From Convolutriloba macropyga (Eukaryota), in assembly GCF_964194025.1 (NCBI RefSeq), contig NC_134468.1, forward strand, positions 49,414,001 through 49,478,000: a stretch of 64,000 nucleotides of DNA, read 5' to 3'. This document shows, piece after piece, positions 37,669-64,000 of this stretch. Below the pieces are notes generated by a model. The model saw nothing but the letters and a program-made list of their open reading frames with translations. It had not been told where the DNA came from and did no database searches. Every line of letters starts with the position of its first letter. Positions within the stretch are counted from its first letter, which is position 1. The position numbers and the translations under genes are program-made.

Positions 37669-38895
37669 ATGGAGCGGACAGCGGGCCCGCCTGTTGCGCA
37701 GGGAGATACAAGACGACCTATACTGCCCCAACATTTCCCCTCTCCCGATAGCCGAGTAACTGTCAATATTGTAGAAGACCATGATGATGCTCTCCAGTTG
37801 ATCTATCGTGAGATTGGCGCCAAACGTGTACCATTCAGTAACCTAGCTCTTATTCACTTTGACGCTCACCCGGATCTTATGATATCCGATAAATTACAAG
37901 CTGACGATGCTACTAATAAGTCTGCCTTGTTCGATACTTTAGGAATTGAAAATTGGATTTTTCCAGCCGTTTTTGCTGGGCATTTTTCAACTGTAGTTTG
38001 GATTCGACCTGCGTGGGCTTGTCAAATTCCCGATACGGAACCAAATAATCCACTTGATTTGTACATTGGCAAAGATCCAGTTTCGGGACTCCTGAAGGTG
38101 TCATGTTTACATGATTACTTTTTATCAGCATTGATTTACTCGCCTGCTGAGAAACTAAAGAATTCTGTTCCCTTTAAACTCTACGTTCTAAACGGAACTG
38201 ACGATGGAACAGCTGCACAACTTCGTCAAATTACCAGAGAGCACAAGTACATTTTAGACGTTGACTTAGATTACTTCAGCTGTCTGAATCCATTCAAGAA
38301 AATATTTTCCTCTGAGGAGTATGAAATAATAAAAAACTTGTACCATTTTGATCCTCCTAAGTTTAAATATGAGAAACGTGATGTTAATTTCTGCTTGGCT
38401 AGACGTCGCCGTCAGTTGCGAACTTTGGAAGACATAATTGTAAAGGGAACTCCAATTACTGATGAATACAAAAAACTGGCCATTGTGCTGGATAAGGGCC
38501 ACGACCCAGAAATAATACACAATTGTGGGCTGACCTTTGACACGACTGAGTTGCCGCACCACAAGAGCTCAGAGTTGGAGATCAAGACTTCCATGTACGA
38601 GTTCAGCCACTTAATAGCATGTGCAATGTCTTCCCCTGGCTTCTGCCCTTCCCTTATTACAATTGCCAGAAGTTCTCTGGACGAGTACTGCCCGAAGGAC
38701 CAGGTGGATCTGATCCAGTTCAAAGTGATTGAGACGTTTGAGGAGTTTTACCAGATGATGAGTATCATTTATCACTATGAATTTGTAGAGTACAAAGGTG
38801 AGAATGAGGATGACGATGGGCAGAGGACAAGTTTGAATCAAGAGGAGAGATTGAGTGATCAGATGATATTTTTGAACAACCTTAGAACTTCTTAA
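37669..38895 (+). CDS. C5orf22: UPF0489 family protein (C5orf22 homolog), intronless
   Basis: IVEDHDDAL, LIHFDAHPDL, IENWIFPAVFAGH, ILDVDLDYFSCLNPF, LPHH, ITIARSSLDEYCP. First ATG at 37669. Confidence 0.9.
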   Translation: MERTAGPPVAQGDTRRPILPQHFPSPDSRVTVNIVEDHDDALQLIYREIGAKRVPFSNLALIHFDAHPDLMISDKLQADDATNKSALFDTLGIENWIFPAVFAGHFSTVVWIRPAWACQIPDTEPNNPLDLYIGKDPVSGLLKVSCLHDYFLSALIYSPAEKLKNSVPFKLYVLNGTDDGTAAQLRQITREHKYILDVDLDYFSCLNPFKKIFSSEEYEIIKNLYHFDPPKFKYEKRDVNFCLARRRRQLRTLEDIIVKGTPITDEYKKLAIVLDKGHDPEIIHNCGLTFDTTELPHHKSSELEIKTSMYEFSHLIACAMSSPGFCPSLITIARSSLDEYCPKDQVDLIQFKVIETFEEFYQMMSIIYHYEFVEYKGENEDDDGQRTSLNQEERLSDQMIFLNNLRTS

Positions 38896-39195: not shown

Positions 39196-42100
39196 ATGAG
39201 TTTTGGAAACTGTTCGAACCTGGTCCAAAATGAGTCTAACAGCCAGAGTGGTCTCCATGTTCCTCGTGGAAAACTGTGGCATGAATTGAAAAATCAGAAC
39301 AACACCCTGACATCTGGCTCTGATAGCTTAATTTATTTGTCTTCTGATGATGAAGAATATCTTGACATAAATGGGAACCGCACAGTGAATGATTCAAATG
39401 CGAAGCCTAACCGTGTGCCTAATCATCACGCAGATAAGACTTCCAAAAAGCGAATTGTTGTTCAAAAAGGAGCACCATCAGCTGTCAGAGAGGATGACAA
39501 TTTTCTTGTTCAGTGCAGCTCCAAAAGCTCGATCAACGAGGCTCAAAACAGTTCAGGTAAATCAAAGAAGAGATCTAAAAAGAGTAAACGATCAATGAAA
39601 ATAGACTCTTGCTCCTCTATTGAGGCGACCAAAAAGAATAAGAGGAAGATAAAGTGTCGAACAAAGAAGGCAAAGTCAAAGGCTAAAAAGGCGAAATCGG
39701 AAGATGATTCATCAACAATTGCAGAAAAAAACAGTGCAGTAGAAAGTGGTTCACTTGCTAGCTTATCGAGCAAAAACGCTAAAAAGGCATTGAGTCATAT
39801 TAATAACGCCGAATCGGAAACTGTAAAGGAATTGGGAACGCCAGAGGATATACGTGATGGCTCGAAGGTTAGAAGAAAAGCTTTGGCTGGAATCTTGGAT
39901 AAGCAAGGTAAACATAACATTTCAATAAATAATATTAAAGCAAATTAATCGAAGGTAGTCATAGTTCCTTTTTTCAGAAATCTGTAGTTCAGTTAGAGGT
40001 TCTATCCGAAAACGTTGCTTTGATTCCAATTTCGTTCGGCGTTTCGTCAAGTATAGGGTGCGAGGAAAAATTCTGCCGAGTTAAATTTTTAGCTGGTTTG
40101 TAGAGCCGTAAAGCTACATACAGCCAACTGAATAGTACTACTGCAGCGGTAGTAACCCCTGACTGTCGGAATTTCACTCCGTAACTTAATTTTCGTTCTA
40201 TTTTCTTCAGCCAAACAAAAGCTGAAACCTTGATAGTTTCTTCAACTACTTCGTGTTACATTGCCTCCAATCAATCAATCAATCTCAAATCAAAATTGGT
40301 GCAATCATATGGGCCCTGTCGGCTTGCGGTTTGTGAATAGCTCTTAATGACGCAAAAGAAGTTATTGGTTCTCTAATTTTTCAAGATACATATGTGCGTT
40401 TTTAACAGACCTTGTGATGATTATTCTTCTGGGTTAAGAGTGCTCAAAAGGCAGGGGTTGATGAGAAATTGAGAATAGCTTTTTGAACAAAGAAAAAATT
40501 TTGCCTTCACATTTTTGTTGCAATGTGATATTCCTGCTGCTTAGCTTAATGCTCTGTGAATAAAGACTGGAAGTGCCGATTTTTAATAGACATTGCAATG
40601 TGTTGCCATCTAATAATGCTCCCTGCAATCTTTATCTTAATTATGCTGCATTATTTTACTAGCTCTGTAATGGTTAACGATTGTGGTATCATCATAAAAG
40701 TTTCCAGATTGTTCCGACCCCCACTTTAGTGTGGAGGGAGGAGCTATATACTCAAATGGGTTTTTTTGTTCAGACAATTTTGGCCGATCGATATAATCAT
40801 CGTAGAGAGTTGTGAATGGTATCATTAGAAAGCCAGTCCAGCGTAGAATATGAAATTTAAAAAAAATTTCAATTTTTGTTTTTTATAGGGAGATATCGAG
40901 GTTTAAAGTTTTGTGAATAATTGCTGTTTTTATTCGCGTTTTCAGTATTTTTGACCAAGTTTTCGTCAATTTGGCTAAAAAAGTTTAAACTTGTTAACTG
41001 TACTGTTATTTATTTCAAGATAAAAGAGGGTTGCTGATTTGTTCGATCCGAGTTTTTTTTGGCAAGAATTTATCCTAAATTTTTCAAAATTGACTTTTTT
41101 CTAGCCCACTTGCTTTAAATTTGCAGGAAGTAGGCACCTTAAGACTGCGGTCGAATTCTTCTTAAGCTCAGAAAAGAGCTAGTTGTAATCCCACTGGCTT
41201 TAAGAGTCTTCTGGATCATAATTTTGCAAGTTTTTTTGCAAATTTAAACTCGATCCTTACAAAAAAGCATTATTTTGACAGACTGAAAATTTTGTTTAAA
41301 AACTGATCTTTTTCGCAATCATTTGAAAAATTGACTGTTTTGTTAGACGCGCAGCAATGTCTTGGCTGATATTGAACTCACCGTGGATAAAGAATTTTTT
41401 AGATTTAAATGGGGCGCGACCTTTTTTTCAAAGAATTTCCGCTATGTAAATGTTTTTATGTAAATTACTGACAAGAATCTCAAATCAGGGCTCAATTAAT
41501 GACAGATACCATTTACAAAAAAGATATCCAACGAATTTATAATATGGTTTCAGAGTTAAGCTTATGGTTTTTATGGCTTTGACCAATTGTTTTCGTAAAA
41601 ATTTTATAGACTTCTTGAGTTTTGCTTTGATTTGTTATACTTTTTGTAGCTCAATGACTTAGTGTCCCCAACCAAAGATGCATTTAGTTTTTTAGGAGGT
41701 ATAGATGAACCTAGAAAACTCTTTCAGTTGTTGTCAAATGTCTTTTATGATTTTGAATTTATTTGTTTTAAGAAAATATCCGTGATTTTTTTAACTTTGC
41801 CAATTTTATCTTATTTCTTTCAACTTCGGGCGCAGCCTCAGTAAAAGCAGACAGTAACCAATTTTGTTTGAGTAATAATTTTTTTTGGAAATTGTTTTAT
41901 ATTCAACTAATGTTTTCCTTGTTTTCATACTACGCGTTTTCAAATATTTTTATTCATTTTCATTTTTAAGCATAATTGCATTTTTTATGAGTCCATTTTG
42001 TTTGCTTCTCGAAATATCACATTGTTGGCAAATTTACTTGAAAGGAAAACAAAGTAAGAAAATTGAACATTGTTGGAAAAGTGCGTATCTGTATATGTTA

Positions 42101-45100
42101 ATTGTTTTTGTTGAATAATTTATGCTTTTTGGGCGGAGACCAAGTTACCTCGCAAAATTTTAAGGATTTTGTTTTTTTTCTATGTTTTTCTTTCTTTTTG
42201 TTGTAGTCCTTCATATTCCTGATAACGATAGGTCTCAATTGCTTCCACAGGACCAACTACTCCACCTACATAAAGATTTTAGTTTATAGCTGTTTGTTTT
42301 AATGACTTTCAAGTTAAATTTTTAAAAAAAGTTTTTTTAAATTTCTCTTTTTGCTTTCAATTTGGTCACCATGTAACTCAATCTCACTAATAAGAATTCT
42401 CAATTACTTTCGATGATTCATCCACTTTTATCGTTTTATGGCGCTTTGTTATTCGTTGTGACTGATTGCTTCCACCATTTATTTTCAAAAAGGTTTTCGA
42501 TATTTCTATACTGTTCAATTTTCGGGTTTCTTGTTGTTGTCTTGTCTACGTTGTCCTTTTATAGGGAAGGCTTGTTGATGTTAGGATGAGGAGAGCGGGA
42601 TGATTTACAGTTTCTGCGGGTAAAATCTTATTAGTATAGTGCCTTGAATAGTGTAATGTAAAATTGTTTGAGGTTTTGGCTTCTTTGTGTGTTTGTTATT
42701 TATTTGTTATTTTGTGGAGTCTTGAAGTCGTCTCATTATTAATAGGCTCAATTGGCTTCCTGAGGTGTAGCAATTGAGTCCGTCTCAAATCTGTTCTGAC
42801 TTTTGGAAATATTTGTTTCCAAAACATATTTGGGTTGTAAACATAGGTCACAACCCGTTTGCAGTGAGCTATAAATTAACTCTTATAACGGTTTAAGCTT
42901 CAAATTTTTGTTTCTTGGCTTTGTTGCTACTTTTACTACGAGAGTTCATAGAATGTTTGAGATTTTTATATTTTTGTACACTTTAGGATTTTTGTTTTCT
43001 TTTTGGTTTATAACAATAATCGTAAGTCCCCATTGGCTTTAAGTTTTTGTGCTATTGAAGATTGGATTATGGCATGTCTGAATTGCTTCCTATGGAGATA
43101 TAAATGAAAATTTCGATGATTTCTGGTGATATCTAATGACATTAATAACTGTGAAGTTAATTGTTTTCAAAAATAGAAACGTTTTTTTTTAACTTTGCAC
43201 CTTTTTTCAACTTTTGCAACTTTGCTATTTTTTCAGTTTTTTGTCGACCTGTTAACCAGTCGCATTGAGAACCGGTCCCATATCTTTTCTGATGAAGTAT
43301 AGGTTAAACTGTTTTGTTTATGTTTTATCTGATGCTAGTTCGATTTTGTTATGATTTTTTTAATTATAGACATCGAGTTGTGGTCGTAAATAATGTTTGT
43401 TTTTTGATTTTTTATGCTCCTTGTTAGTAGTTCTATTATCAAAAACGTTCATCGGCCCTCTAGCGTGGCATTATTGTATTCCATGGGTTGTTTATTGAAC
43501 GATATGTATGTTTTTGATCTCTTCATCAGTTGGTAGCTAATTAAGTTAACAATGTGGATGAGCGGGGTCGGAACATTATGTGCGCACGCACATTACCGAG
43601 CCTCCTTGTTAACGTTGAAATTTGGTGATGAAATATTTTAACTTTATGTTTATTTAATTTTTGAGATGCTGATAGTCTGGTCACCTTGACACCAGAAGAT
43701 CCAAAAAACGGCTTTCTAAAACAGTCTCATGAATTTTGATTTTGCGAGCAAATTTAAAGTTCACTTGGTTATTTTTGTCTCATTTTATGGAGAGATATTG
43801 TCTCAAAAAGAGTTTTGATGGAAATATTTTCTGTCTGTTTTGATTACTGAGGTTACGCTGAAATTTTGACCGGAAAGTTTTAAGATCATTTGTACAACTC
43901 GAGAATAATAAGTTTTAGTACTAGACCGAAGTGCTATAGCTTTGAGCACACCGAAAAGGGATTTGTGTATGGACAACTAATTGTGTTTGAAGTGTGTAAA
44001 ATATTACTGAGACGGTAACTTTGTATCGTTTTTAGGGCATTAATGGCACTGAATAACATTAAGGGACTTTGATACAGCCAATGAAAATGAAGTAATTGTC
44101 GAATAGCAAAAATTGCAATTAGGGATGGAAGGATTTTGGCAATAATGTCTTCAGATCTTGACTTCATGATGTATCAATTAATTCCAAATTTTTGTGACAA
44201 CAATTACAAACGAAAACTACGGATCAGTTAAATTTTGTTCGGCCTCCAATGAACATTAGCTCTGGACAGTTGTAAAATTGTTTTTTTTTTAAGTTGAGTT
44301 GGAAAAGTCCATGGGTATTGATGTACTCTTGGCCACCAAATCAGCTGGAACTTATCTAACCCCCATGCTCTTTACGCAGCACACTTTAATAAGAGTTATT
44401 GCTTGAATGCACGTAGTACCTCACGTAGAGAATATTTATTACACTGAAACTTAGTTTGTAACATTTATATTAGAACTGTTGGTCTTTATATGCGATATTT
44501 CGTACTTTCGACTTTCCGTTTAATTTTTTTGATCTTCTGACTTTTCGTCCTCGAAAACAAGATAAACAAGAGTCCGGAGGGAATTAAGTCGCTAATAAGC
44601 ACAGCTAGCTACTGTCGAAGCCAACCGCCCGCCAGCCGTATGAGAGCAATTCGCACTCGGGTTTAGTTGGTTACGTTTTGTCATTCTACGTAGTTATGTG
44701 ATCTAATATTTTGAATACGTTTTCAATTAGATAAATGACTTGCGGCCGCCTGCGTGCAATTTCACCTGGTGCCCAAATTTCACCTGGTGGAGTCGTATAG
44801 AAGAGTGCTAAAATCTGTACTTAAATTGCGAAAAGGTGTTATGTTAAAAAGAGATAGATAACATTTTATTGTCATGTCAAATTTCAGTCAACATTTATGT
44901 ATGGCATGAGAAGTGTAAGTATAATACAAATGAAAACATTAAACTCGACATTTATCATTTTATTAACACGAATACAACTTACGCATCCTTCAACGAGGCG
45001 GCACCCGGAGTCTGTGCATAGCACAGAATGTTACAACATGCCTGTCAAGGTTGCTAAACTTAAATTCTGCCAGAGAAACCGTTGGGAGTGTCCGAAAGCA

Positions 45101-48100
45101 ACTTATATGCATGCATTGGAGAAAATTACATTTGAACTGCAACACCAAAGCCCAACAAAAAATTATTTTTGTTTTTGTCAATTAGTCACTACTCAAGTTT
45201 CGTAACTGTTCTTTGTTTTTTTTCTATAAAACTAGGTGCCGAATTTCTTTTTCAATATTCGATATGATTTTTCGAAATTTCATGAGCACAACATGACAAA
45301 TAAATTTTCAAATTCTCGCAGAAGTTTTATCAGCTACATTTAAAAATAGTTAGACACATTTGTCGAAATTATTAAGTACTTATTCTAATTTTTCTTTCTG
45401 ACAGTTTTTGAGCTCTGCCTGTATTTGTCTAACATTTGAATGAACTATCTCTCACACTTACTATCCGTCTCTCCCTCCATCATACACGCATACCAGAAAC
45501 ATAAGAAACACACCCATGAATGCACGAACACCAGCGCGCACGCACACGCACAATAACATACACAAACACATAAAAACCGTACCTCCAAAAAATCTTAAAT
45601 TTTCTTTGACATGTAATCATAATTCGAAAATCGTCAGCGTTTATAATATGGCTCGACTGTTTTTCTTGAAGAATTGTTTTTTCTAGTTGTGACTTCTCTA
45701 TGAAATTATATCGGTATTAGTAAAATTGACAGTGAAATCCGAAATTACTTTTAAAGGTTTCCGAAGTTTTTTGTCATTTTTGATGTTTTGTGAGCGTAAG
45801 GGCACAGTAAATTTTCAACATTTTTCAAAATTTCAACGGCGCAATAAATTTTCCTCTGAGATTAACAAGCACACAGCCTTGCATTGGACATATTGAAATA
45901 CGCGATTTTCTGTTTCCCTTTTCGATGTAATTTTTGTCTATTACCATTTCTGCGGGTTTTTGCTCTCTGCCTCTGTTTGTACCTAACGTTTGAAGGAACA
46001 ATTTCTCTTATGAAAACTTTCTCTTTCTCTCTCTCTCACACACAAACACTCCTCTCTCTCACATATATCACGCACATTGAAAAAACGCCCATGTATACAC
46101 CCACACAGCCGCGCATGCACACATACAAACACACAAACCTCGCCACCCAAAAAAAATTGAAATTCGAAAATATTCTTTTTGACATTTGATCTTTACAAAA
46201 TATTCGTCTTGGTTGTTTTTTTTCTGATGAACCAGCTAAGGACTTCTTGAGGCATTTGTATCGCGGTAATCGTCAAATTGACTCTAAAATCCGAATTGAA
46301 CTTTTTGATTTATTTCGAAAAATTCATGTCATTTTTGATGTTTCGTGAGCATTTTCGTTCCAGAGCCCATTCCAGAGATGTTTCCAGAGCCCATTCCAGG
46401 GATGTTTCGTTCCAGAGCCCATTCATTTTTCAAAATATACCAAGACGTGAAAAAAGTTAGAATTTTTTAATGCTTCTGACAGTTTCTGAATTCCGCCTCT
46501 AATTGTTTTTAACATGTAAAGGAACGTCAGAAGCTGTTCGTAAAGTCGTGTGTCAATTAGTAGCTTTGAGGAACTTTGTTTATCATATAATTTAATGTTT
46601 TGGCTTTTCTTTTTTTTAAGTAGGAGTATTTGCAAAGAAATATGAAAATTCAATAATTTTTTTGAGCACTGAAAATAAAATATTTTTCTTTCAAAAAAAA
46701 AAATTTGCGTTTACAGATGCGGAGTTTCGTAGTCAATGAAGGATCTATTTTTTCATTTATAAACGCCCAAAGACTTAAAAATTTCAGTTCCAGGAGTAAT
46801 TTCCAGTTAAAGAGAAATGAAACATTATTTTCTCATTTTCAAAAAAAAATGTAAACGTATTAAATTTTTCAACCTGACAATCCCTAAACTCTCTAACGTT
46901 CAATTTTATCTGTTTTTCTTTATACTAGGGAAGATTAGTTCGAACTATCTGCTCTGACTTCATAAAGAATACAAATAAAATTTTCCCCTTTTTTCAATAT
47001 TTAATTTGGTTGATTTGAAATTCATTTCTTGATACTGATTTTCTTTACTTAAATCGTAAGTTCTGATTAAATGAGACGAATTATTTGCAGAACTCTAGAA
47101 TTTTGGAAAATCACTTATGAGAGCTCTAAAGCCTGAAGTCTTCAATTTCCCACAGATCTTTTTGATACAGAGAAAAAAATGTTTCGTACAATATTTTTTA
47201 AACAACAGAGAGGCGTATAGAAAGGTTTTTTAAACAAAATTTTGAGAAAATATTTTTGGAAATTTTTGGTCATATAGTTCAATTTGTTAATTTTTAGGCT
47301 TGAAACTGTAATGTATTATTGAAAAGTCTCCATTTGACCTTACTAAATTTACTACAATATTTTTCTTGGTTTCCATCTTAACTATGAATCCGATTTGACA
47401 CCCCTTCCCCCTGCACCCACTCCGCCCTCGAGCGATCGTTTTTTCTTTCTCAATTTTTCTTTCGAATATTCCAGTGTTCCACCTTTTTTCAAATTTCTGA
47501 TATTCTTAAAAATGAAAACTTGATCCTGAGGGCTACAAAATGGTGTCTTTCTTTTGTTTCTCTACGATGCGTAAACAAAAGTAAAAATTTGACTGAAGAA
47601 AAACGCCAACCTCACATATATATTCCCCCATTTTTGAAAAAAATGTTTGAACATTAATAAATTTGGATGTGCAGGATTTGTCGTTGGGATGTTGTTTTCT
47701 CCCTGTATACATGAATAGATAGTTTCGCTTTTTATAACGCAGAGGCCTCAATTGTTTTTCTTGTTTGCTTTTCTAACTACGTCAATTCTGTATATGTAAA
47801 ACCATTTATTAGCAGAAAGCAGTAGTGAAGATGACTGAGGACAAAACTATTGAACAACATCATAAGTTCTTGCTTTGAAAGTCTGTTTTGTAAATACTTG
47901 TGTTTGAGTTTATTTGTCATGCTCCTGAACATATATTCCTAAACGTATAGACGTTTCGTTTTTGAGTAGTTTGCTATGCGCAAGAGCGTATTAGAGCATT
48001 TATTGTTGATTGATACTTTTAGATTGTCTGCCCGTTCAAACCCCGCAATCAATTAGTCTCGATGAGTTTTGGCAGATTCCGCCTCTAACAGATAAAGACA

Positions 48101-48408
48101 ATATAGCGCATCTTGCCTTAGAGAAACGAAATATCGTACAAGACAAATTGAAGAAAACAGCTGCTGTTTATCCCACAAGTGCTCTGCTAATCTGTAATTT
48201 GGATGTCGTTGCAAATCAGTTTTGTGTACCTGAAACAAACAACGACATTGGTAGTTGGCATTGCAGCTTCATTGAGAGTTCCGATTCCTACCAGCTACCT
48301 GACACCATTTTTACTGTTGGTAAGTCCAGGAATTCTGCGCATGTCAAATCTGTGTCTGATCTGAGCATGGTGGGTGTTTATAGAATCGAAGGTCAATTTC
48401 AACTGTAA
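39196..48408 (+). CDS. Orphan gene A: two exons (39196-39907, 48023-48408), 365 aa; Lys/Ser-rich disordered N-terminus and C-terminal divergent dsRBD-like domain
   Basis: The phase-1 donor CAAG|GTAAAC (39908) and phase-1 acceptor TTTTAG| (48022) join in frame (1098 nt). Sequence on both sides of the junction is homologous to gene B. Confidence 0.72.
43270..43480 (+). repeat. Dispersed repeat family E; related copy at ~59920-60150
   Basis: Shared CATATCTTTTCTG, TTTTATCTGA.GCTA, TAGACAT.GA, CTCCTT and TTCAT.GGCCCTCTA blocks. Confidence 0.6.
44990..46970. repeat. Dispersed repeat family B, inverted copy inside the gene A intron
   Basis: The reverse complement of 45010-45125 matches 18893-19000, and the reverse complement of 46860-46970 matches 17210-17320. 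Confidence 0.7.
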
Positions 48409-48824
48409 AATTCCCAACCCAAGAGTCATACAATTCTCTTGTTTCGGTCTTCATATTAAGTCTTCATTTCGTTCTTCAAATCCCTCAATTTTGTGAATCT
48501 CCCTAACCACTGGAGATCATCTCCAATGGGTTAACAAACGGGGTTGATGTAAATTTTAGAATTTTGAATTGTGGCCTACAACCTATCATCTCTCGAAAGG
48601 TTACACACCAGGCCTTTTTTCTGACTGTGTAGTAAGTTATGGCTGTGAAATAAATTGATTTCTTTCATCTGTAAAAATGCTGAAAAACATGAAAATGGTA
48701 CATCTGCAATACGTATTAAAAATTTTGTTTTTTTTTTGGTTTTGACTCCACTTTCAGCCAAATTGGTTTTTTAGACAATGTTAACATGTTATTGTAAATT
48801 TGTGAACCTTCCTATTAGATTTCT

Positions 48825-50215
48825 TATGCAATCTTGAGCGCTCGTTTTTGCCTTTTTAGACGCCGTTTAGTGGTTTTTATACCCATTTTCATTTAGTGTC
48901 TGGGGTAATTTTTTTGCTTGAGTTTAGTTTTTATGGCGGTCTTTTTGGTCTTTTGATTTTGTTAATATCAATTTGAGTTCGTTTTATTTGAAGAAGATGG
49001 CTAAATTAAAACTTTTTTTGCTGAATTTTTCTGTTTTTGTTTTTTTTGGCTATTTCTACTTTTTTAGGCTTTCAGAATATTTTTAATGTTCAATTAGGGT
49101 TGTTCGTATAGTAATTGTTACTAAATGGAAACAATTTAAGGTTTCATGGTACATATTTTCATAAAATAAATTAATATTTTCTGCAGTTTCTGGAAGTTAT
49201 ACTTCTTGCCAATGTTTTAGGTGTTTTCCAGTGCGTTTAGGTGCTCAGCGAATTAACAGGAACTGTTTGTTAGGGTTTGTTTAGAGTAGTCATTGAGACT
49301 TCGCAAGTTTCAGAGTTTTATTTTTTGAAAAATGACAGGTTGTTGAATGCTCTCAAAGGGAGCTTGTAGCAATTATATTAGTCCTGTGGTCTTTTTTGCG
49401 ATTTTTGGCTCGACCGATTTTCCTGTGTCCCTATTGACTTTTCGGTCTCGAATACGGGATAAGTAGACAACACTTGGAGGGCAGTAGGTTCTGTTGGAGG
49501 CCTATGCTTTACTTCACAAGTCTAAGAATACATTTTGTCAAAACTTATGAGGAGAAGCTTTCATTGTGTGAACGTGGTTCTTAATTTTAAGAGATTGCCC
49601 TTCCCAATCTCCTCCAACACCCCCAGTCAACCTGACTCACTTGGTTTTTTGAACCCCTCTTGTCCGGCCCTCTCAATAGAAAAGAGTGGGTAACTATATA
49701 CCGCTTTTTTGATCAAGTTCGAAAAAATTAGATAAGAAAATTTTTTGACTATATACTAGCGAAATTTTTTTGATCATGCGGCTTCTTTGAAGCAGTTATT
49801 ACTTCTTTTTTTTCGAAAAAGTGATTTTTCTAAACCAGCTTAACAATCAACTGTGTTTGGAAATATTTTGACCATCCCAACTAATATTAGAGTTTTTATG
49901 CAATCTTTATCTATTTTTTTCAATACCGCCGTTTGACATGCTTTCTTAGCGGTTTTATACTTTTCATGTTTTTGGTGTCGTCGGAGTTTTTTTGGTTGAC
50001 AGTAGTTTTTGGGTTGGTATTGGTGGCCTTATATTTTCTTTAATATCAATTTAAGTTTGTTTCAGTTGAAGATAGGCAAAATTTTGGCTTAATTTACCTA
50101 ATTTGGAGGGCTGTTTTGCTTTATTCTTCTCTTTTTTTTGGCTTGATAGTACTTATTTGCATAAAATAAATAATTTCTGCAGGTTGTTGTAGTTATGCTT
50201 CTTGCCGATGTTTCC
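48825..50215 (+). repeat. Diverged direct repeat pair (~48825-49220 and ~49898-50215)
   Basis: Shared ATGCAATCTT, TTAATATCAATTT.AGTT, CATAAAATAAAT and TTCTGCAG..AGTTAT.CTTCTTGCC.ATGTTT. Confidence 0.6.
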
Positions 50216-53022: not shown

Positions 53023-54192
53023 ACTTTATTTGATATCCCAGTATCATCCAATATATTTTGGACAGCAAAAAAATCTGCCTTCGGTGGGTTTTGTTATCGG
53101 ATGAGCTTATATCTGATGAGAGATGAACTTGTTTTAGCAAATGATCCGAAGCTCGCTATGCAGGCAGCAGCTGCTAAATTTCTTCAGGTTTATTTTGGAG
53201 AGGAACAAATCGCCAATTTACTTCTATCTAACTACATGAACAAGAAAAAGTCACTCAAATTGTACAAAGATCCTATTTTTGAGACTAGCAAAAGCTGGAA
53301 AGAGTTAGAACCATGTAAGAATAATGGAAACGCTAAGACGTCTATCACTCCAAGTCCAGGAAAGTGCCACCGATCAACTGACCAGCAAAATGTGTGTTCT
53401 ATTGATACTCCTAGCAAAAAATGGAAGATGAAAACAGCAACTTTAAAGAAAACAGCAACTTTAAAGAAAACAGCAACTTTAGCTTCATTGAATCGATGCG
53501 AGAATTTTATGCCATATCTTTCGATACCTTTGGACAATCCGCTCAAATTGGGCAGTCGTCGCTTGTTCTTGAAAAAAGAAAATACAATGTTAGTGAACAA
53601 GTTGGCGTCCCTTAAAAACGAGTTGAGTGAAGTTCGAAAGCATACCTTTCAAAGCCGAAGAGACGAGAGTTGTGTACAACCCTCCTTTACTAGCCACTAT
53701 GACACTCTAATGATCACTCTACAATCACTCAAAAAGGTTGAATTCGTGGACAGTTTATCGATTGACATTAAAGTTGAACCAAGAACTGATATGCATAAGT
53801 TAAAACTGCATGTGAGTGATCGCTACACTTTTACATGCGAATCGGCACTGGGATTTGAAGCAGCTCTTATGAAAGGAGTTGAACAAGCGGGAGAGTTCAT
53901 GCAGGCTGTGAGAGTGGAAGGGCGTGAAGTCTTGATACCCAGAAGCCTAAAATTTAGCACTACCTCATTGGTGTCATTATTGGAGCTGCAGACGGGGATA
54001 CCTCTGGAATCAATTAATCTGAGTTACTATCTACACGAAGACAAAGGTCACACGTATGGAGGAAAAATACTGATCAATGGAATAACCTGTGAATACAAAG
54101 ATAAGCTATCTAAAGAGATGAAAAAGGACACCGTCATTTGTTCGCTTCTTCAGAAGTACTTGATTGAGCATTTGGGTTTCAGAATTGTTTAA
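53023..54192 (+). CDS. Orphan gene C: intronless, three divergent dsRBD-like units; true start uncertain (first in-frame ATG 53101, frame open from 53023)
   Basis: 363-aa ORF. KLAMQAAAAKFLQ resembles dsRBD helix 2, and GHTYGGKILINGITCEYKDKLSKEMKKDTVICSLL follows the beta2-beta3-alpha2 pattern. The domain call is by eye only. Confidence 0.7.
   Translation, partial: TLFDIPVSSNIFWTAKKSAFGGFCYRMSLYLMRDELVLANDPKLAMQAAAAKFLQVYFGEEQIANLLLSNYMNKKKSLKLYKDPIFETSKSWKELEPCKNNGNAKTSITPSPGKCHRSTDQQNVCSIDTPSKKWKMKTATLKKTATLKKTATLASLNRCENFMPYLSIPLDNPLKLGSRRLFLKKENTMLVNKLASLKNELSEVRKHTFQSRRDESCVQPSFTSHYDTLMITLQSLKKVEFVDSLSIDIKVEPRTDMHKLKLHVSDRYTFTCESALGFEAALMKGVEQAGEFMQAVRVEGREVLIPRSLKFSTTSLVSLLELQTGIPLESINLSYYLHEDKGHTYGGKILINGITCEYKDKLSKEMKKDTVICSLLQKYLIEHLGFRIV
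53430..53481 (+). repeat. In-frame 18-bp coding minisatellite (KTATLK x~3)
   Basis: GAAAACAGCAACTTTAAA repeated ~2.9 times. Confidence 0.92.
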
Positions 54193-56833: not shown

Positions 56834-59800
56834 ATGGCATACGATCCTACCAGATGGGAGTACGAAGCATATTTCGCTCCACAATTACAGCTAGGGCACA
56901 CGTCTCTCCCGATTCACTACAACGCTCACTTCAACCGGGGTCCTTGGTCCAGCCATCTACAGACTGGGATTTACAATCGAAGCAATTTGGATTCGCAAGA
57001 CTACAGTAGCAGTTCGTCAAGATTGCAAAACTATCATGCGTCAGTTCCATTTGCATTTGTACCGCCGGGTTCGTCTAATTACCTCCCAAACTCATCAAAC
57101 GAAATCAGACAAAAAGAAAGATATGCTGGTTCTCAGTTTGTGACTACCAAAAGCGCACTCTCGATGGCTCCGCTGGGGAAAATTGTGCCAAACAAATTCA
57201 GAAGAAATGTTCTTCCCGGCTTAATGGATTTCAAAGGTGAGCTGATAGCTGCATATCAAAACTTCAATAGTTGCTCTCATTGACTTCAAGTTCCTTTTTT
57301 AAACAGCTCTCGAACTAATCCAAAAGTGAATATTGGGGTTCTAGCGTTCTTTAGGACTCGCTAAGGAGTATTGGTGGAACGACTTTTTGATCAATAATTT
57401 TGGAGTGTATTTGAAACAGGAAATGTGGCACTTAAAAAATAAGTGCTTAAGTCAAATTCCTGAATGCTATTGAACAGCAGAGAGTAGAGTGATTTTCTGT
57501 TTATACTGCATCTTGAAGAGCGACCAAACTACGAGTAAAATCAATTTCCATTGTCAAGCAGATTATTCTTGTTTTTAAAGTTTATAGTTATTGTGAAGCG
57601 TTTTTTTTAAATCATTCTTAGGCCAAAATGTCTACTTTTCTGTTGTGACAGGATTTTTTTCTCAACTTCTCAAAATTAACGCAAATTTGAGAAAGCGACA
57701 AATTTTGAAATATTTTCTTAGTTTTCTTTCAATTTCTTCAAAGAAACTTCAATTCCCCATTTAGTGTCGGTTTTGTACTTTGGTACGATGAGATTTTTAT
57801 TAATCTAGATTCAGATCATAACAGCTTACGACATTTTGATTCTTTTGTTACTGAGTGCTTAATTGGTCCGATCCACTTAAGTGGGCGGAGGAACTATATA
57901 CTCAACTGTTTTTTTGTTCAGTCAATTTTGCCGGTCGATATACTCATCCTGCAGGATTGTGTGTGGTATCATTAGAAAGCTTGACAAACGTAGATTTTCA
58001 TGTTAAACATATATCTTCGAATTACGCTTTTTCCGGGGAGTTACGGAGGTTTAAAAATGTGAACGTGAGCCGACGTGATGAAATTGTCAACGATAGTCTC
58101 ACTGGTTTTACGTTTTATGATAGACGAGAGTTTCTGGATTGTTTGAACCAACTGTTTTGGCAAAATTTTTAAAATTCAAGGTTTTATATAAAATGGCATC
58201 AAATATGACTATTTGTTCCTCTTTTGCCCAGTTTGACCGTTGGTGCAGACATCACTACTACTGACATAAACCTTCCTTTTTCAGACATGGGCTGATTTTT
58301 ACCTCCGATTCTTAAAAACGTTTTCAGAAAATAACGTTTTTGCTGTCTTCCGCTAATTTAAACCGATATTTAAAAAAATGGATATTTTTTTATATTATAA
58401 ATTTTGTTTACCAAATAAGCTATTACGCATTTTTAAAGACAAATGAGTTTTGCAATAACCGCACATCGATAGCAAGGCCAGTCCTTGGTCTCAACGTTCA
58501 TTTTTGCATTGAAAAATGATTGATCGTTTTTTGTTCTGTCATTTTTGAAATATTTCTTGCATTTTTTTCATCCCAATCAAAAGTTTCTTTCATTTAAAGG
58601 TTCAATTAATAGGAGCTCCTTTTATATTCCGTTATGGTCCAATGACAAAATATTGAGTTCTGTAAGTAAAGTTTTTGGTTTTTATGACTCCCACAAATTG
58701 TTTTGGTTAATTTTAAATGAATTCTTGAAATTTGCAATATTGATGTTTTTTGTAGTGTCATGGCTGAGTATATTTATGCAAATGTCTAATGCGGTATCGA
58801 AGGACCTATTAAAAAACTATCTAGTGCTTTCAGTGTACACAATGGTGTCTTGTTAATATAACTAAATTTGTATCCAAAATTCATCATCTGTTTTTGATAA
58901 TAACTTTTTGATCAAATTAGATAATTTGATAACATTTGGGACATTTGTTGTAATTGAGAAGCATGAAGAGCAGGACCAGTTCTGGTCAGGTTGTTGAGGT
59001 TAATTGTCCAAAAATTAGTCCGATTGTAACGGTTTCCTGTATTTAATTTGCTTTGCCTTTGATTTTTTTTTACAGACCAGAATTTTTTGACAGGTCATAT
59101 TTACTTGCAAAGGGAGGCCAATGAACATACATAATAAATTCAGCGCAAACCATGTGGTTTTTGGTTTCAACACCATTTGCATAAAATTACTCGTGAAATT
59201 TAAGTTTTGCCTCTATTCATTGTTTTGTGTAGTCTTGATTTGGTTCCATTAATGGCTTGCATGATAGGTTTAAGCAGCAGCAATGTAAACTACTTGACAT
59301 TTTCAAGCTGAAAGCCTACGGTTGTTATGCCTTACGCTTTTATAAAATATTTGTTTCAAAAAATATTGGACATTCGAAATTTGATCTTATTTCTGCAGCT
59401 TCTCAGCGTAGTTTCAGCAAAGAGAGAGGTCACATTTTTTCAAGTGAACTGTAATGTAGTCTTCATTGCTGTTTTTTTAATTCAAATGATGGTTTTTTGT
59501 TGATACTACGAGTTCTTATATTTTCTTTTTTGACATTTTTAGTTTTTGAGGTTCTCTTTTGCTCTTTTCCAGTCATCACATTAATGGCATATTACTGATA
59601 AGTCGCTTATCACATTAAGGGCGCTGAAATAAGCCGCAATTGATTATACATATTTTTAGTGAATAGGTTTTGATTTTATAGGCTTCGATACGGTTTCCTC
59701 GCAAAACTTTTGATTTTGCCTTCACTTGCTCTATTTATTGTAGTATGGCATTCTCAATAATGACAGATCTCAATGGTTTTGTACAGGGGTATAAACGAAG

Positions 59801-62800
59801 CCTATGATTGATTTCAGTTGATAGCTAATTGCTTTCAAAACTTTGAATTTAATTGTTTTCGAAAAGTGTAGATTTTGCCCTTTTTGTTTTCTGTCTACTT
59901 ATTAAACATTCTCAATAAAGATAGGTCTCATATCTTTTCTGGTTGAATGCAAGTCATTTGATTTAGATTACGTTTTATCTGAGGCTATTTTGACTGTTTC
60001 GTTAAGTTTTTTTTAAGAAAAAGTTGATAGACATTGAATTTTTTGGTTGTAAGTAATGCTTGTTGTTTTTGTTTCATTTTGTTTTTTTTTTGGTTTGTCT
60101 CTTACTCTCCTTAGTGACTGGTTTCATTGGCCCTCTAATGTGTTAATGTATATTTTGTATAGAAGTTTGAGCTTAAAGCGAATTTTTAAATGGATACACC
60201 ATCTATTTTCGAACATTAAGTGATTTTTTGAAAGTTTTCTTTTCATCATTTTTTGGACAATTAAGTCAAAAATGTTTTTGATTGAGTCAAAAATATGGAT
60301 CTAAATGCATTTTACGAGCCAGTAACAGGAGGGCAAAAGCACAGGCGTAACAACGACTAAAGAATTCTTGAAAGAATAAATCGTTGGAGCAGCGGAAACT
60401 TCGGAGAGCTCTGGAACGAAGCTTGCTCTGTGAAGCAAACAAAACGATCAAATACAAACTTTGAAGAAATTATCAGACGTGTAAAAATTTTGTGCTTCCA
60501 GGGCCAATATGGCACAGCAGCAGAAATTTTGACTTCTGAAGGTTTTGCAACAGTCAACAAGGCAACTCTCGATGCTCTGAAAAAATTGCATCCCACTGAA
60601 GAAAAGCCTAGCATAGTCCAAAATTTTTCGTCACAAGCTTATCAAATCAGTGAGGAAAATGTTATGGAACAGCTGAACTTGTTTTCTAAGTTTACAACCA
60701 CTGGTCCTTTAAATATGTTTGCCGAACATCTTTTGCATGCTGTACAGTGTACCGCTTCATATCAGTCAAAATGCTTTGAGAGTTCTAAGCTGGTAAACGT
60801 AATTTGCCGTGGAGAACTTCCTGAATGTTTCACAGGCTCTCAGTAGTGCATCGCTATCAGCATTGAAAACGAAAGGCGGTATTCGCCCTATTGCAGTCGG
60901 AGAAGTCTTGAGGAGGCTAATCGCTAAATGTTTAGCCAAGGAAGCAAAAAGCAAATTCAGAAGCAAAAGAAATTTTCCATAGCCTGCAATTGGGTGTTGG
61001 AGTGAAGGGTGGCGCGGAAGCCATTAAACATACATTTGACTAAGCTTTCGTAAGAAAAATACCTCGTCAAGTTCCTCGGGTATTTTGCAATTTGATTTTT
61101 GCAATGCCTTCAATTCTATAAAACTCAGTGAAATGTTGAAAGCTGTTGCCAATTCAATGTCTGGCATAGCCGCTTTCACCTATTCCTGTTATTCACAACA
61201 CAGCCGATTATTATTTTACAAATTTGTTGATCACAGTGAATGCGGTATCCAACAAGGCGACCCACTTTACTTTTTTCTCTGACGCTTTGGCCCATTATAG
61301 AGAAAATTCAGGAATTGTCGCCAAACCTTCAACGACATGTAACGACATGAACTGTGGTACACTGTAGATTTAGACAGACTTGATGAAAGAATGAAACGAA
61401 ATGATATTTCGGGCCTGGAGCTGCGTTAGGATCCCCAGAGTTTGTCTGCATGCAAATTTACGAAAGTATGGGGAAAATATTGGTATTTTTGAAAATTTGG
61501 CCTACCTTGATGACCCTCAGTGCTCCTTAGGTATTCTACGTCACTGCATCGGGTCCCAAAAATGGTGTGTCCCATCGGATCCCAAAACGCCCACCAGTTC
61601 TGTTATTAAATCCTTAAAAGATTTTGATGCCCAACAGCGTGAAAAACTTGAGAATATCCTTGGAACTGTTCTTCCAGAACAAACATTGACTCAAGCAACC
61701 CCACCCATAACCCTATCAGGGTTGGGTGTTCGCCTATGCCAAGACCAGTATAAAGCATCATACGTTGGTTCTGTTCTGTCCTCTGAAGAGCTTGTTTCAA
61801 AAATAACTGGTGAAAACCCAAAAAAAACTGCGAAATTTTTGAGGATCTTTATTCCGATATAGCACAATGGACATTTCAGACTTTTCGCAAAAGACGATCC
61901 AACAAGCTCTTGATAACGAAAAGTTCCAAGGTCTCAAAGAGAATCTAGCTTCTGAAATAGAGGCCGCCCGACTTCTCTCATTGTCTGTTCGACATGCTGG
62001 AGCATGGTTGTCTGCTCCCCCCATTCCAGCTCTTGGGCTTCATATGGCACCAAATGAGTTTAGAGTTAGTGCAAAATACAGGTTGGGTGTCCCTGTCTAC
62101 GACGCAGAAAGGAAAATGCCCTTCCGTAAAGCTGGAATTTTTGATATCTATTGTGATCATGCCATTGCGTGTCACGGTGGAGGAGCCGAAATTGCCAGAC
62201 ATGACCGGATTCGGGATAATTTAGTGTATGTTTGCTCTTCTGCGAACCTCTCTCCAGTAGTGGAAAAAACATATTCCAGAAAGCCAATCACGCCCGGGAA
62301 ACTTCTTTGTCCCGGCCTGGAAAGCGGGGAAACCTGCTGGATTTGATGTAACTGTTACTTCGTCGGTGCAATCCAACTCATTAATGCGGCTACAAAGGCA
62401 GTATATGCACTCTATGCGGCAGATGAACAAAAATATTTCCTCCACGACGAGAACTGCGCAAAAATGGTAATTACATTTGTTCCTCTTGCAATCGAAGTCC
62501 TTGGCGGAATATTAGCAACTTTCAAAAAACGAGCGTTTGGTTGTGTTAAGTGACAATCGTTCTTTCGCAGGGGTTGTCTGTAGCTTTCTGTAAACTCATT
62601 CAAGGCTTGTCAGTCACGACTATTCGGGGATCAGCAAGAATGTTATTAGCACGAGCTCCCTAGTTGAGTATTTGATATTTTAAATTCTCGCCCAATCAGA
62701 TGGCAGATTGCTTGATCCACTTTATAATCAAGTGGTCTGTCTCGATTATTTTGGCTCCCGCAATTCAATTACGAGTCGAGAATTAGAAGAAACTAGATTG

Positions 62801-63837
62801 TTCCTTTTGTGATGAGCCGTTGAAATGCCTGCGGCAAACGGGACCCTTATTAATATGGAGTTCTGCCGTTTTTATTCGTACCTGACCAAAGTGGGGAGAA
62901 TAAAAACAAACATTTTAGATGAAAAATACTGTTGAAAAATACTGATGGAATAAGATTCATAATCTGTTGATTTGTTGTATTGATAACCACCGTTATGTTA
63001 ACCAAATCAATTGTCAATTAAATATTATTTTAATTCTCGAAACATGGTTTTAAAAATGAGATTGAACTAGAAAATACTGTTGCAAAACACTCTAAACAGA
63101 AGAAATAGGCAGAAAAATTTGAAAAGCACGCGCCGAAATTTGGTATCAAATTGCTTTATGAAAAACAGGGTAAAATCAGGTTAAAACAGGTTTTGAAAAG
63201 CACGTGCCGAAGTTTGGTATCAAATTGCTTTATGAAAAACAGGTTAAAATCAGGTTAAAACAGGTTTTGAAAAGCACGTGCCGAAGTTTGGTATCAAATT
63301 GCTTTATGAAAAACAGGTTAAAATCAACACCAATTCACTAAAATTTTCTAAATATAATTGAGTAGAACGACTTCGATTGATAAATTTACACTTAAAACAA
63401 CTTGTTTTCACGTGCGGCATTTGACTTCGTTGAATTTTTTGAAGCTATAAATAATGAATAAATTATGGATTTCATTCCCCCATAAAATAAGGTCGACGTG
63501 ACTATGCACTTATATTTTAGGGAACCCTATGAAGGTCAATGCACCTGTCACAATGAGAGTAGATGGAGTGTTCAGAACTGCTCCTTTGTGCGACACCAAC
63601 AATGTAAGACGACTTGAGGATGAGAAACGGAGCAGAATTCTCAATCTGATGAGCAAGAGGAGAGACGTGTTTCCTGTAAACGCCTTGAACCAGTGGTCAA
63701 CAAAGCCAGCCACTTGTGAGCGCTCTTTTCGAACGGATGGAAAACCAGTGCGCTACTGTTCCATCGACTGCTCCAAAGACATCGTACTGGTTGATCAGAT
63801 ACTTGTATTCGGTTATCATGACTTTCCAACTCTTTGA
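56834..63837 (+). CDS. Orphan gene B (paralog of gene A): exons 56834-57236 and 63521-63837; C-terminus truncated by a 38-nt insertion, possibly a pseudogene allele
   Basis: The phase-1 donor AAAG|GTGAGC (57237) and phase-1 acceptor TTTTAG| (63520) join in frame. FPVNALNQW resembles dsRBD helix 1. Homologous to gene A. Confidence 0.7.
60300..62663 (+). mobile_element. CRE-clade non-LTR retrotransposon, 5'-truncated and heavily frameshifted, within the gene B intron
   Basis: GGIRPIAVGEVLRRLIAKC, QFDFCNAFNS, GIQQGDPL, AGAWLSAPPIPALGLH, DHAIACHGGG..RHDRIRD. Collinear with the minus-strand copy but a distinct subfamily. Confidence 0.88.
63118..63326 (+). repeat. Tandem repeat, 74 bp x~2.8
   Basis: GAAAAGCACGYGCCGAARTTTGGTATCAAATTGC... 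at 63121, 63195 and 63269. Confidence 0.93.
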
Positions 63838-64000
63838 GTTTATTATGACTTCCAAATGACTCTTCTCGAGTTGCGGTAAAAGGAATAATGATCAACGACC
63901 TTACGTTAATCAAGTATCTGAGATTGTTTTTTCCGAGATTTTGCATTAGCACTTTGAGGTCCTTCCAGCATGTTGCTATTAGTCTAAGAAAAGATTTGCT

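What the first reader, a model, noticed from the sequence alone, without database searches (positions are those of the whole stretch)
39196..64000. Hidden paralog pair (genes A and B) defining an unnamed, fast-evolving gene family with a divergent dsRBD-like C-terminal domain
Seen in the sequence: four apparently unrelated ORFs splice into two genes across 8115-nt and 6284-nt phase-1 introns at an equivalent position. The exon-1 ends align (KVRRKALAGILDKQ versus KFRRNVLPGLMDFK). The exon-2 sequences also align: LPVQTPQSISLDEFWQIPPLTDKDNIAHLALEKRNIVQDKLKKTAAVYPTSAL..CSFIESSDSYQLPDTIFTVG versus MKVNAPVTMRVDGVFRTAPLCDTNNVRRLEDEKRSRILNLMSKRRDVFPVNAL..CSIDCSKDIVLVDQILVFG. The N-termini are unrelated low-complexity regions: Lys/Ser-rich (NLS-like) in A, and Ser/Asn/Tyr-rich in B. 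Established: dsRBDs begin with a PxxxL helix (PVSALNE in ADAR-like proteins) and end in GxSKKxA. Inference: a lineage-specific family of RNA-binding adaptors with swapped disordered N-termini, which I cannot match to any named family.
Basis: partly seen in the sequence, partly recalled or inferred. Interest (0 to 1): 0.8.

Follow-up and report, generated by a model that had tools for sequence, protein, structure and literature searches.

The report
Tandem acoel-type dsRBD-fold gene pair
Two neighbouring genes are real, diverged duplicates of an unnamed protein family so far named only in an acoel worm; each has three exons, not two, and ends in a pair of degenerate double-stranded-RNA-binding-type folds of unknown function.

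Summary
The paralogy and both proposed splice junctions (39907/48023, 57236/63521) hold up by comparison, but the gene models were incomplete. Both exon 2s end at a further phase-1 donor. Gene A continues at 53138 into the ORF that another note calls intronless "gene C". Gene B continues about 524 nt past its exon 2, beyond the window end.

Spliced A is an open 687 aa. It aligns with spliced B (574 aa, from a second haplotype) in one HSP across both junctions (29% identity, E 1e-43). A metagenomic relative has the same two phase-1 introns, at 336 and 58 nt. Two Convolutriloba macropyga RefSeq proteins (674 and 690 aa, "uncharacterized") read straight across the exon 2/3 junction.

AlphaFold places two confident alpha-beta-beta-beta-alpha domains at the C-terminus of exon 3, and Foldseek matches them to PACT, TRBP, Loqs and Staufen.

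No Pfam model hits any member. The KKxAK and GPxH RNA-contact motifs are not conserved, so a protein-binding (type-B-like) scaffold role is more likely than classical dsRNA binding.

No RNA evidence was obtainable. The result is a lineage-restricted, unnamed dsRBD-fold family of moderate interest.

The parts
39196..39907 (+). Gene A exon 1: ATG to the phase-1 donor (G|gtaaac). Encodes residues 1-237, a Lys/Ser-rich, NLS-like low-complexity N-terminus ending in the conserved KVRRKALAGILD tail.
39908..48022 (+). Gene A intron 1, 8115 nt, phase 1, GT..AG.
   Evidence: the A-B HSP is collinear across the junction
48023..48319 (+). Gene A exon 2, 297 nt, phase 1 at both ends. Carries the conserved short motif SISLDEFWQIPP (48049-48084) and the start of the middle alpha/beta domain (from about 48160).
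48320..53137 (+). Gene A intron 2, 4818 nt, phase 1 (GTTG|gtaagt ... tgttttag|CA). It splits an Ala codon at the same site as in B and in the metagenomic relative L005. It holds high-copy repeats, and the other haplotype has a roughly 5 kb structural difference near 48411.
53138..54192 (+). Gene A exon 3, including the stop; this is the ORF another note calls 'gene C'. It contains:
- the last helix pair of the middle domain (53138-53244)
- a variable linker with a KKTATL repeat (indel at 53430-53465)
- a coiled-coil helix (53539-53658)
- dsRBD-fold C1 (53698-53919)
- dsRBD-fold C2 (53959-54168)
56834..57236 (+). Gene B exon 1: ATG to the phase-1 donor (G|gtgagc). A Ser/Asn/Tyr-rich N-terminus ending in KFRRNVLPGLMD.
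57237..63520 (+). Gene B intron 1, 6284 nt, phase 1. Contains reverse-transcriptase-type retroelement ORF fragments (60430-62346).
63521..63811 (+). Gene B exon 2, 291 nt, phase 1 at both ends. The donor is G|gttatc here and G|gttagt in the other haplotype.
63812..64000 (+). Start of gene B intron 2. In the other haplotype the intron is 524 nt and exon 3 (343 codons including the split Ala, = P0002) follows, so B's last exon lies about 335 nt beyond the window end.

Best explanation
A and B are tandem, same-strand paralogs of an unnamed protein family whose only named members come from the acoel Convolutriloba macropyga.

Gene structure (shown by sequence comparison). Each gene has three coding exons joined by two phase-1 introns at conserved positions. 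Gene A is 39196-39907 + 48023-48319 + 53138-54192, giving 687 aa. The ORF called 'gene C' is A's last exon. Gene B's last exon lies just beyond the window.

Protein layout:
- a gene-specific disordered N-terminus (shown)
- a short conserved motif of the type [ST]-I-[ST]-x-x-E-F-x-x-x-P-P (shown)
- a middle domain of about 70 aa with a dsRBD-like pattern, split by intron 2 and ending in a conserved helix pair (A..A.AKF.Q....G......LL.NY); its fold is inferred, not shown
- a variable linker
- a coiled-coil helix (predicted)
- a C-terminal tandem of two alpha-beta-beta-beta-alpha dsRBD folds (predicted with high confidence)

Function (inferred). The RNA-contact signatures of canonical dsRBDs are not conserved. 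The proteins therefore most likely act as multimeric scaffolds or adaptors that use type-B-like dsRBD folds for protein or RNP contacts. The different N-termini would send the two paralogs to different places: A's Lys-rich tail suggests the nucleus. Classical dsRNA binding seems less likely.
For: Splice sites and frames:
- Sites read directly.
- Spliced A is an open 687 aa; spliced B (from locus L002) is an open 574 aa.

Collinearity across junctions:
- A and B align in one BLASTP HSP, A223-687 to B120-574, 29% identity, E 1e-43, crossing both junctions.
- Intron 2 splits an Ala codon at the same alignment column in A (G|CA), B (G|CT) and the metagenomic relative L005 (G|CT, intron only 58 nt).
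- RefSeq protein P0019 (XP_075251100.1) is contiguous across the A exon 2/3 junction: A314-370 to P0019 304-361, 41% identity, E 3e-9. B181-574 aligns to P0019 275-687 in one HSP, E 4e-13.

Family:
- phmmer of exon 3 against 1.84 billion representatives gave 11 hits with E from 4e-200 to 3e-6.
- Cluster members carry C. macropyga names.

Fold:
- AF2 gives pLDDT 85-94 for residues 200-363 of the exon-3 ORF, forming two alpha-beta-beta-beta-alpha units.
- Foldseek top hits are TARBP2, Loqs-PB, DRB4, MLE and PKR in the PDB, PACT, Staufen, ADAR and TARBP2 in Swiss-Prot models, and DRBM proteins in AFDB clusters.

Constraint:
- A exon 3 is 99.0% identical between haplotypes, against about 95-97% for introns. 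dN/dS is about 0.27 (5 nonsynonymous, 5 synonymous changes).

RNA-contact motifs:
- They are absent or not conserved. The type A/type B distinction is taken from PMC5716075.
Against: - No transcript evidence. The only runs holding the locus are genomic DNA.
- One haplotype carries a nonsense change at 54103 that removes the last helix of C2, so gene A may be dispensable or decaying in part of the population.
- The middle domain's fold is unproven.
- Gene A's own C2 has a Lys-rich stretch (DKLSKEMKKD) at the start of alpha2 that resembles SKKxAK, so some RNA binding cannot be excluded.
- The functional part of the statement is inference only.
Confidence: 0.7

Rival explanations
1. A and B are two-exon genes that end shortly after exon 2 by read-through into the intron. 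The ORF at 53101-54192 is a separate, intronless gene C.
For: - ORF 53101-54192 has its own ATG and is 363 aa.
- The exon-2 frames of A and B stay open for a few codons past the donor.
- No RNA data contradict this layout.
Against: - Similarity of ORF C to every homolog starts exactly at the AG acceptor at 53137; the 12 residues upstream are unmatched.
- The acceptor is phase-compatible with the exon-2 donor.
- A and B align in one HSP across the junction.
- B, L005 and the RefSeq proteins place the same two pieces next to each other.
- A stand-alone gene C would begin with the orphan last helix of a domain.
Confidence: 0.06
2. The proteins are true dsRNA-binding cofactors: a very diverged acoel counterpart of Dicer/Drosha partners such as TRBP, PACT, Loqs or DGCR8, or of Staufen.
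For: - The best Foldseek matches are those proteins.
- The family has three dsRBD-like units, like Dicer partners.
- Gene A's C2 has a Lys-rich alpha2 start.
- Language-model neighbours include dsrm, DND1_DSRM and Loquacious-like clusters.
Against: - No Pfam dsrm-clan hit in 12 members, even at E 0.1-1.
- No PDB sequence hit with family profiles.
- KKxAK and the loop-2 His are not conserved.
- The architecture differs from all of them: about 690 aa, a coiled coil, and the tandem at the extreme C-terminus.
- Fold matches are generic and do not favour one family.
Confidence: 0.15
3. One or both genes are decaying duplicates (pseudogenes in the making) rather than functional genes.
For: - A nonsense allele at 54103 and a 36-nt repeat indel in the second haplotype.
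- Two nonsynonymous and no synonymous polymorphisms in A exon 2 among the sequenced individuals.
- B exon 1 has dN/dS of about 0.5.
- No expression data.
Against: - Both three-exon frames are fully open, with intact GT/AG sites, in the window. B is also open in the other haplotype.
- Exons are three to five times less diverged than introns, and dN/dS is about 0.27-0.3 for the structured parts.
- Core residues are invariant across 12 members.
Confidence: 0.1

Closest known systems
Uncharacterized proteins LOC142343223 (XP_075251100.1, 690 aa) and LOC142337219 (XP_075242471.1, 674 aa) of the acoel Convolutriloba macropyga
   Same: True homologs. They have the same length class as A (687 aa), the same middle-domain helix pair, coiled coil and C-terminal tandem, and they align collinearly with spliced A and B.
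   Different: Only 23-27% identical over the long alignments, rising to 41% in the 58-residue middle-domain stretch. They carry an extra N-terminal copy of the middle-type domain where A and B have low-complexity tails; B238-279 matches P0019 135-176 with E 0.002. They have no annotation or known function either.
Dicer-partner dsRBD proteins (TRBP/TARBP2, PACT/PRKRA, Loquacious, R2D2)
   Same: Several alpha-beta-beta-beta-alpha domains. These are the best Foldseek matches (E 2e-5 to 4.5e-4, probability 0.97-1.0). Their last dsRBD is a type-B, protein-binding domain, which is the behaviour inferred here.
   Different: No sequence similarity is detectable. The partners are about 300-370 aa with two canonical RNA-binding dsRBDs first. 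Here none of the three domains keeps the RNA-contact motifs, there is a coiled coil, and the protein is twice as long.
Staufen dsRBD5 / STAU1 SSM-RBD5
   Different: Staufen has four or five dsRBDs recognised by Pfam, plus Staufen_C. None of these is detected here.
Bacterial ribosome hibernation factors HPF/YfiA
   Same: The highest VIA-align Z for domain C1 (9.5, rmsd 2.7 over 81 residues). Their beta-alpha-beta-beta-beta-alpha fold is close to the dsRBD topology.
   Different: No N-terminal extra strand appears in the model's DSSP. There is no sequence match, the context is eukaryotic and multidomain, and Foldseek ranks tandem dsRBD proteins first. This is treated as fold resemblance only.

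Membership tests
dsRBD (Pfam dsrm PF00035 and related DSRM-type models) | An alpha1-beta1-beta2-beta3-alpha2 fold of about 65-70 residues | tested here: met
   Met for the two C-terminal domains of gene A exon 3. AF2 gives pLDDT 85-94 with H200-211/E219-226/E231-238/E242-248/H252-273 and H287-298/E306-312/E318-325/E328-334/H342-356. Foldseek and VIA-align match dsRBDs.
   - AF2 of homolog P0019 gives pLDDT below 50 before the last helix.
- Language-model neighbours of P0019 262-366 are mostly dsrm, LIX1 and DND1_DSRM at 0.79-0.86, which is a lead only.
- Exon 2 alone gives noise.
- The spliced window protein could not be submitted.
dsRBD (Pfam dsrm PF00035 and related DSRM-type models) | A significant match to the family's sequence profile | tested here: not met
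   - No dsrm-type Pfam hit in A, B or 10 homologs at E up to 0.1-1.
- Family profiles find no dsRBD chain in the PDB at E up to 10.
dsRBD (Pfam dsrm PF00035 and related DSRM-type models) | Type-A RNA-contact motifs: His in the beta1-beta2 loop (GPxH) and KKxAK at the start of alpha2 | tested here: not met
   Family columns at these positions hold 0-2 basic residues and no conserved His in any of the three domains. Only gene A's C2 is Lys-rich. The positions were set from the AF2 secondary structure, not from a residue-level structural alignment.
dsRBD (Pfam dsrm PF00035 and related DSRM-type models) | Binding of A-form dsRNA | not testable with these tools
   Needs a gel-shift or similar assay with recombinant protein.
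Dicer-partner dsRBPs (TRBP/PACT/Loqs/R2D2) | Two canonical N-terminal dsRBDs plus a C-terminal type-B dsRBD that binds the Dicer helicase insert; about 300-400 aa | tested here: not met
   The architecture is about 575-690 aa with a disordered N-terminus, a middle domain, a coiled coil and a C-terminal tandem. There are no canonical dsRBDs. Dicer binding was not tested.
HPF/YfiA ribosome hibernation factors (PF02482) | A beta-alpha-beta-beta-beta-alpha fold with an N-terminal strand, and a Pfam Ribosomal_S30AE match | tested here: not met
   [not shown]
The unnamed acoel-type family itself (window A and B, P0002-P0012, P0019) | Collinear similarity over the middle helix pair, the coiled coil and the C-terminal tandem, with invariant L, Y, F, M and P core positions | tested here: met

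The most novel reading that the evidence does not exclude
Acoels and their relatives evolved their own family of scaffold proteins built from three or four degenerate dsRBD folds plus a coiled coil. The family duplicates in tandem and swaps disordered N-termini. It stands in for, or adds a lineage-specific layer to, the canonical dsRBD cofactors of small-RNA or RNP-localisation pathways.
Probability: 0.1. Interest if true: 0.6.

Novelty: new variant of a known kind. Interest (0 to 1): 0.33.

Why it matters
- It corrects the annotation of this locus. Three supposed genes (A, C, B) are really two three-exon paralogs. An annotator using ORFs alone would split gene A and miss the domain that straddles its second intron.
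- It defines a protein family that sequence profiles cannot name. The family is seen in at least two acoel-type genomes and in environmental contigs. Its confidently predicted part is a tandem of degenerate dsRBD folds.
- If these proteins take part in RNA pathways, they would be candidates for lineage-specific cofactors in a phylum whose RNA biology is little known.
- If they are only protein scaffolds, they are one more example of the dsRBD fold being reused for protein binding.

Tried and rejected
- RNA junction check. The look-up of sequencing runs returned four runs of guessed kind. Laid on 48001-54000 they had even depth across introns, so they are genomic DNA. The single read-laying run was then spent, so no splice reads could be obtained.
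- Word-indexed protein searches. The exon-3 query found only the other haplotype. A 13-sequence profile found only its own first row. The C-terminal region of P0019 found nothing. The family came only from the exhaustive phmmer search.
- Pfam on all pieces and 10 homologs: nothing relevant.
- PDB sequence searches with the exon-3 profile and the middle-domain profile: only coiled-coil noise, or nothing.
- hhalign of the middle domain against C1 and C2, and of C1 against C2: no significant internal repeat signal, probability 10% or less.
- AF2 of full-length P0019, to test the middle domain: low confidence there because only three sequences cover it. An alignment that included the window's exon-2 fragments misaligned them and was not used.
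- Atlas features on exon 2 alone: noise, 0.64.
- I first put the exon-2 donor at 48310. Translation showed the error, and the donor GT is at 48320.
- I guessed that the roughly 5 kb haplotype-specific insert in L001 was Polinton-like from its ORFs. Pfam did not support that, so I dropped it.
- tblastn of seven family proteins against the whole window: no further copies.


Full report
**What is at the coordinates**

The window is AT-rich (about 35% G+C) eukaryotic DNA with long introns and retroelement debris. Reading the DNA confirms canonical sites in phase 1.
- Gene A exon 1 ends ...GATAAGCAAG|gtaaac at 39907. Exon 2 starts after cttttag| at 48023.
- Gene B exon 1 ends ...TTCAAAG|gtgagc at 57236. 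Exon 2 starts after attttag| at 63521.
- The introns are 8115 and 6284 nt, as stated.

**Is the A-B similarity more than chance?**

Yes.
- The exon-2 peptides give BLASTP E 2e-9.
- Their Smith-Waterman score is 77, against 24.6 +/- 4.4 for 2000 shuffles, none of which reaches it.
- The two 14-residue exon-1 tails score 36 ungapped. That is the joint best of all 27,104 window pairs between the two exon 1s (2 pairs reach it).
- The rest of the two exon 1s is unrelated low-complexity sequence.

**The gene models were incomplete**

Downstream of A's exon 2 lies the 363-codon ORF at 53101-54192. Another first-stage note (s1-232301) calls this an intronless gene C. It has an acceptor, tgttttag|CA, at 53137/53138 in the matching phase.

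Joining 39196-39907, 48023-48319 and 53138-54192 gives an uninterrupted 687-aa frame. The junction reads ...DTIFTV-A-NDPKLAMQAAAAKF....

**Comparative proof of the third exon**

An exhaustive phmmer search with the 53101-54189 ORF found 11 proteins.
- P0001 is the same gene on a 116-kb ENA contig (locus L001), a second haplotype or strain.
- P0002 is 31% identical and lies on that same contig, 524 nt downstream of B's exon 2 (locus L002).
- In L002, B's exon 2 ends GTATTCG|gttagt and exon 3 starts after ttgtttcag|CT, giving ...DQILVF-A-SHYGLAVQAAYAKF.... The same Ala codon is split at the same column as in A.

Spliced B is an open 574 aa. Spliced A and B align in one BLASTP HSP, A223-687 to B120-574, with 29% identity and E 1e-43. 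The alignment therefore runs without interruption across both junctions of both genes.

A third, more distant relative sits on a 2.2-kb metagenome contig (L005, P0007).
- It has the same layout with short introns: exons 159-420, 757-1047 and 1106-2190, and introns of 336 and 58 nt.
- Both introns are phase 1, and the second again splits G|CT = Ala.

Cluster look-up gave two full-length RefSeq proteins of the acoel Convolutriloba macropyga: XP_075251100.1 (690 aa, P0019) and XP_075242471.1 (674 aa, P0012). Both are named "uncharacterized".
- P0019 reads straight through the position of A's exon 2/3 junction. A314-370 aligns to P0019 304-361 at 41% identity, E 3e-9.
- B181-574 aligns to P0019 275-687 in one HSP, E 4e-13.

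I conclude that gene C is the last exon of gene A, and that B's last exon lies about 335 nt beyond the window end. tblastn finds no further copy in the window.

**No RNA evidence**

The four runs that hold the locus have flat depth across introns, so they are genomic DNA. With only one read-laying run allowed, junction reads could not be checked. All splicing claims here are comparative.

**Constraint and polymorphism**

Between the window and the second haplotype:
- Intron and intergenic DNA is about 95-98% identical.
- A exon 3 is 99.0% identical, with 10 substitutions. By Nei-Gojobori counting these are 5 nonsynonymous over 798 sites and 5 synonymous over 213 sites, so dN/dS is about 0.27.
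- B exon 2 gives about 0.29, and B's disordered exon 1 about 0.5.

The structured parts are therefore under purifying selection and the N-termini less so.

The other haplotype also has two notable differences:
- An AAA-to-TAA change at 54103 cuts off the last 29 residues, which form the final helix.
- It lacks 36 nt of a KKTATL repeat at 53430-53465.

Two variants in A exon 2 seen in the DNA runs (48119 T>C and 48248 T>A) are both nonsynonymous by my reading of the frame. "Fast-evolving" is a fair description: tandem copies are only 29% identical, and identity to Convolutriloba is 23-27% over the long alignments. The genes do not look neutral, however.

**What the protein looks like**

Pfam finds nothing in any exon of A or B or in ten homologs. 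Family profiles find no solved structure by sequence.

AlphaFold2 was run on the exon-3 ORF with the 12-sequence family alignment.
- Residues 200-363 have pLDDT 85-94 and form two alpha-beta-beta-beta-alpha units.
- A long helix at 147-186 has pLDDT 71-86.
- A helix pair at 16-48 has pLDDT about 73.

Structure searches on that model:
- Foldseek against the PDB ranks TARBP2 in the Dicer complex, Loqs-PB, DRB4, MLE, PKR and TRBP first (E 4.5e-4 to 6e-3, probability 0.94-0.99).
- Against Swiss-Prot models it ranks PACT, Staufen, ADAR and TARBP2 first (E 2e-5 to 1e-3).
- AFDB clusters and the ESM Atlas give generic DRBM and RNase III proteins.

I take the dsRBD-type fold of the C-terminal tandem as supported, and membership of the dsrm sequence family as not met.

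Exon 2 supplies the putative alpha1 and three strands. Exon 3 supplies the conserved last helix and a following helix, with consensus A..A.AKF.Q....G......LL.NY.
- Its length and pattern fit a dsRBD.
- The language-model neighbours of the homologous P0019 segment are mostly dsrm, LIX1 and DND1_DSRM clusters at 0.79-0.86.
- AlphaFold on P0019 was not confident there.
- hhalign sees no similarity to C1 or C2.
- Exon 2 alone gives noise.

The label remains a reasonable but untested guess.

Upstream of this domain, exon 2 carries a short motif conserved in every member that reaches that far: SISLDEFWQIPP in A, TITPAEFLALPP in P0019 and MTIKEFLASFP in L005.

**How it probably works**

Canonical (type A) dsRBDs touch RNA through a His-containing beta1-beta2 loop and a KKxAK motif at the start of alpha2. 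Type B domains lack these and bind proteins (PMC5716075, abstract).

In the family alignment these positions hold 0-2 basic residues and no conserved His in any of the three domains. Only gene A's own C2 is Lys-rich there. The invariant residues are hydrophobic core positions plus an E..IP linker between C1 and C2.

My best reading is a multimeric scaffold or adaptor.
- The coiled coil would provide self-association.
- The degenerate dsRBD folds and the short motif would bind partners.
- The paralog-specific disordered N-termini would set localisation. A's tail is Lys/Ser-rich and NLS-like; B's is Ser/Asn/Tyr-rich.

This is inference, at about 0.35 on its own. Classical dsRNA binding or a Dicer/Drosha-partner role is the main rival (about 0.15). 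Partial decay of the genes is a minor one (about 0.1).

**Novelty**

The fold is well known. The family is unnamed, undetectable by Pfam, and so far seen only in acoel-type genomes and unidentified environmental contigs. No paper in the library links acoels with dsRNA-binding proteins.

I rate it a new variant of a known kind, of moderate interest. The main practical result is the corrected gene structure.

Noticed in passing
window 54103 (and L001 about 10952): The second haplotype or strain (ENA contig ctg33092) has AAA changed to TAA here. This truncates gene A by 29 residues, removing the last helix of the final dsRBD fold. The window copy is intact.
   Followed up: partly
window 53430-53465: A 36-nt in-frame indel in a KKTATL tandem repeat of gene A's linker; the window has two more units than the other haplotype. 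Logan contigs of the DNA runs break at 53445/53466.
   Followed up: partly
window about 48411-48450; L001 1-4995: The other haplotype has about 5 kb of unrelated sequence upstream of the point matching window 48411, inside gene A's intron 2, so A's exon 2 is not in L001. Its ORFs (133, 100, 218 aa) have no significant Pfam match. Contigs of all four DNA runs also end at 48425-48449. This is probably a polymorphic insertion or rearrangement.
   Followed up: partly
window 49201-49400, 50201-50400, 51201-51600: Word depth in the DNA runs jumps from about 50 to between 1,500 and 36,000, with many alternative joints between about 49390 and about 50265. These are very high-copy short repeats (a pair about 870 nt apart) inside gene A's intron 2.
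   Followed up: no
window 60430-62346 (+), inside gene B intron 1; also 25283-27872 (-) and 127-1284 (+): Retroelement ORFs. The first-listed set are fragments inside B's intron and resemble the 534-aa ORF at 25283-26887, which hits Pfam RVT_1. The 127-1284 ORF also hits RVT_1.
   Followed up: partly
window 28390-31707 (+) and 37636-38895 (+): Two long single-ORF genes lie just upstream on the same strand. One is a 1105-aa DEAD/Helicase_C helicase, RecQ4-like by eye. The other is a 419-aa UPF0489 protein ending 300 nt before gene A's ATG.
   Followed up: partly
P0017 and P0010 (ENA contig of 420,756 nt); P0019 residues 135-176: In a Convolutriloba-type assembly two family members also share one contig, so tandem duplication recurs there. 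The Convolutriloba proteins also carry an extra N-terminal copy of the middle-type domain; B238-279 matches P0019 135-176 with E 0.002.
   Followed up: no
[not shown]
   Followed up: no
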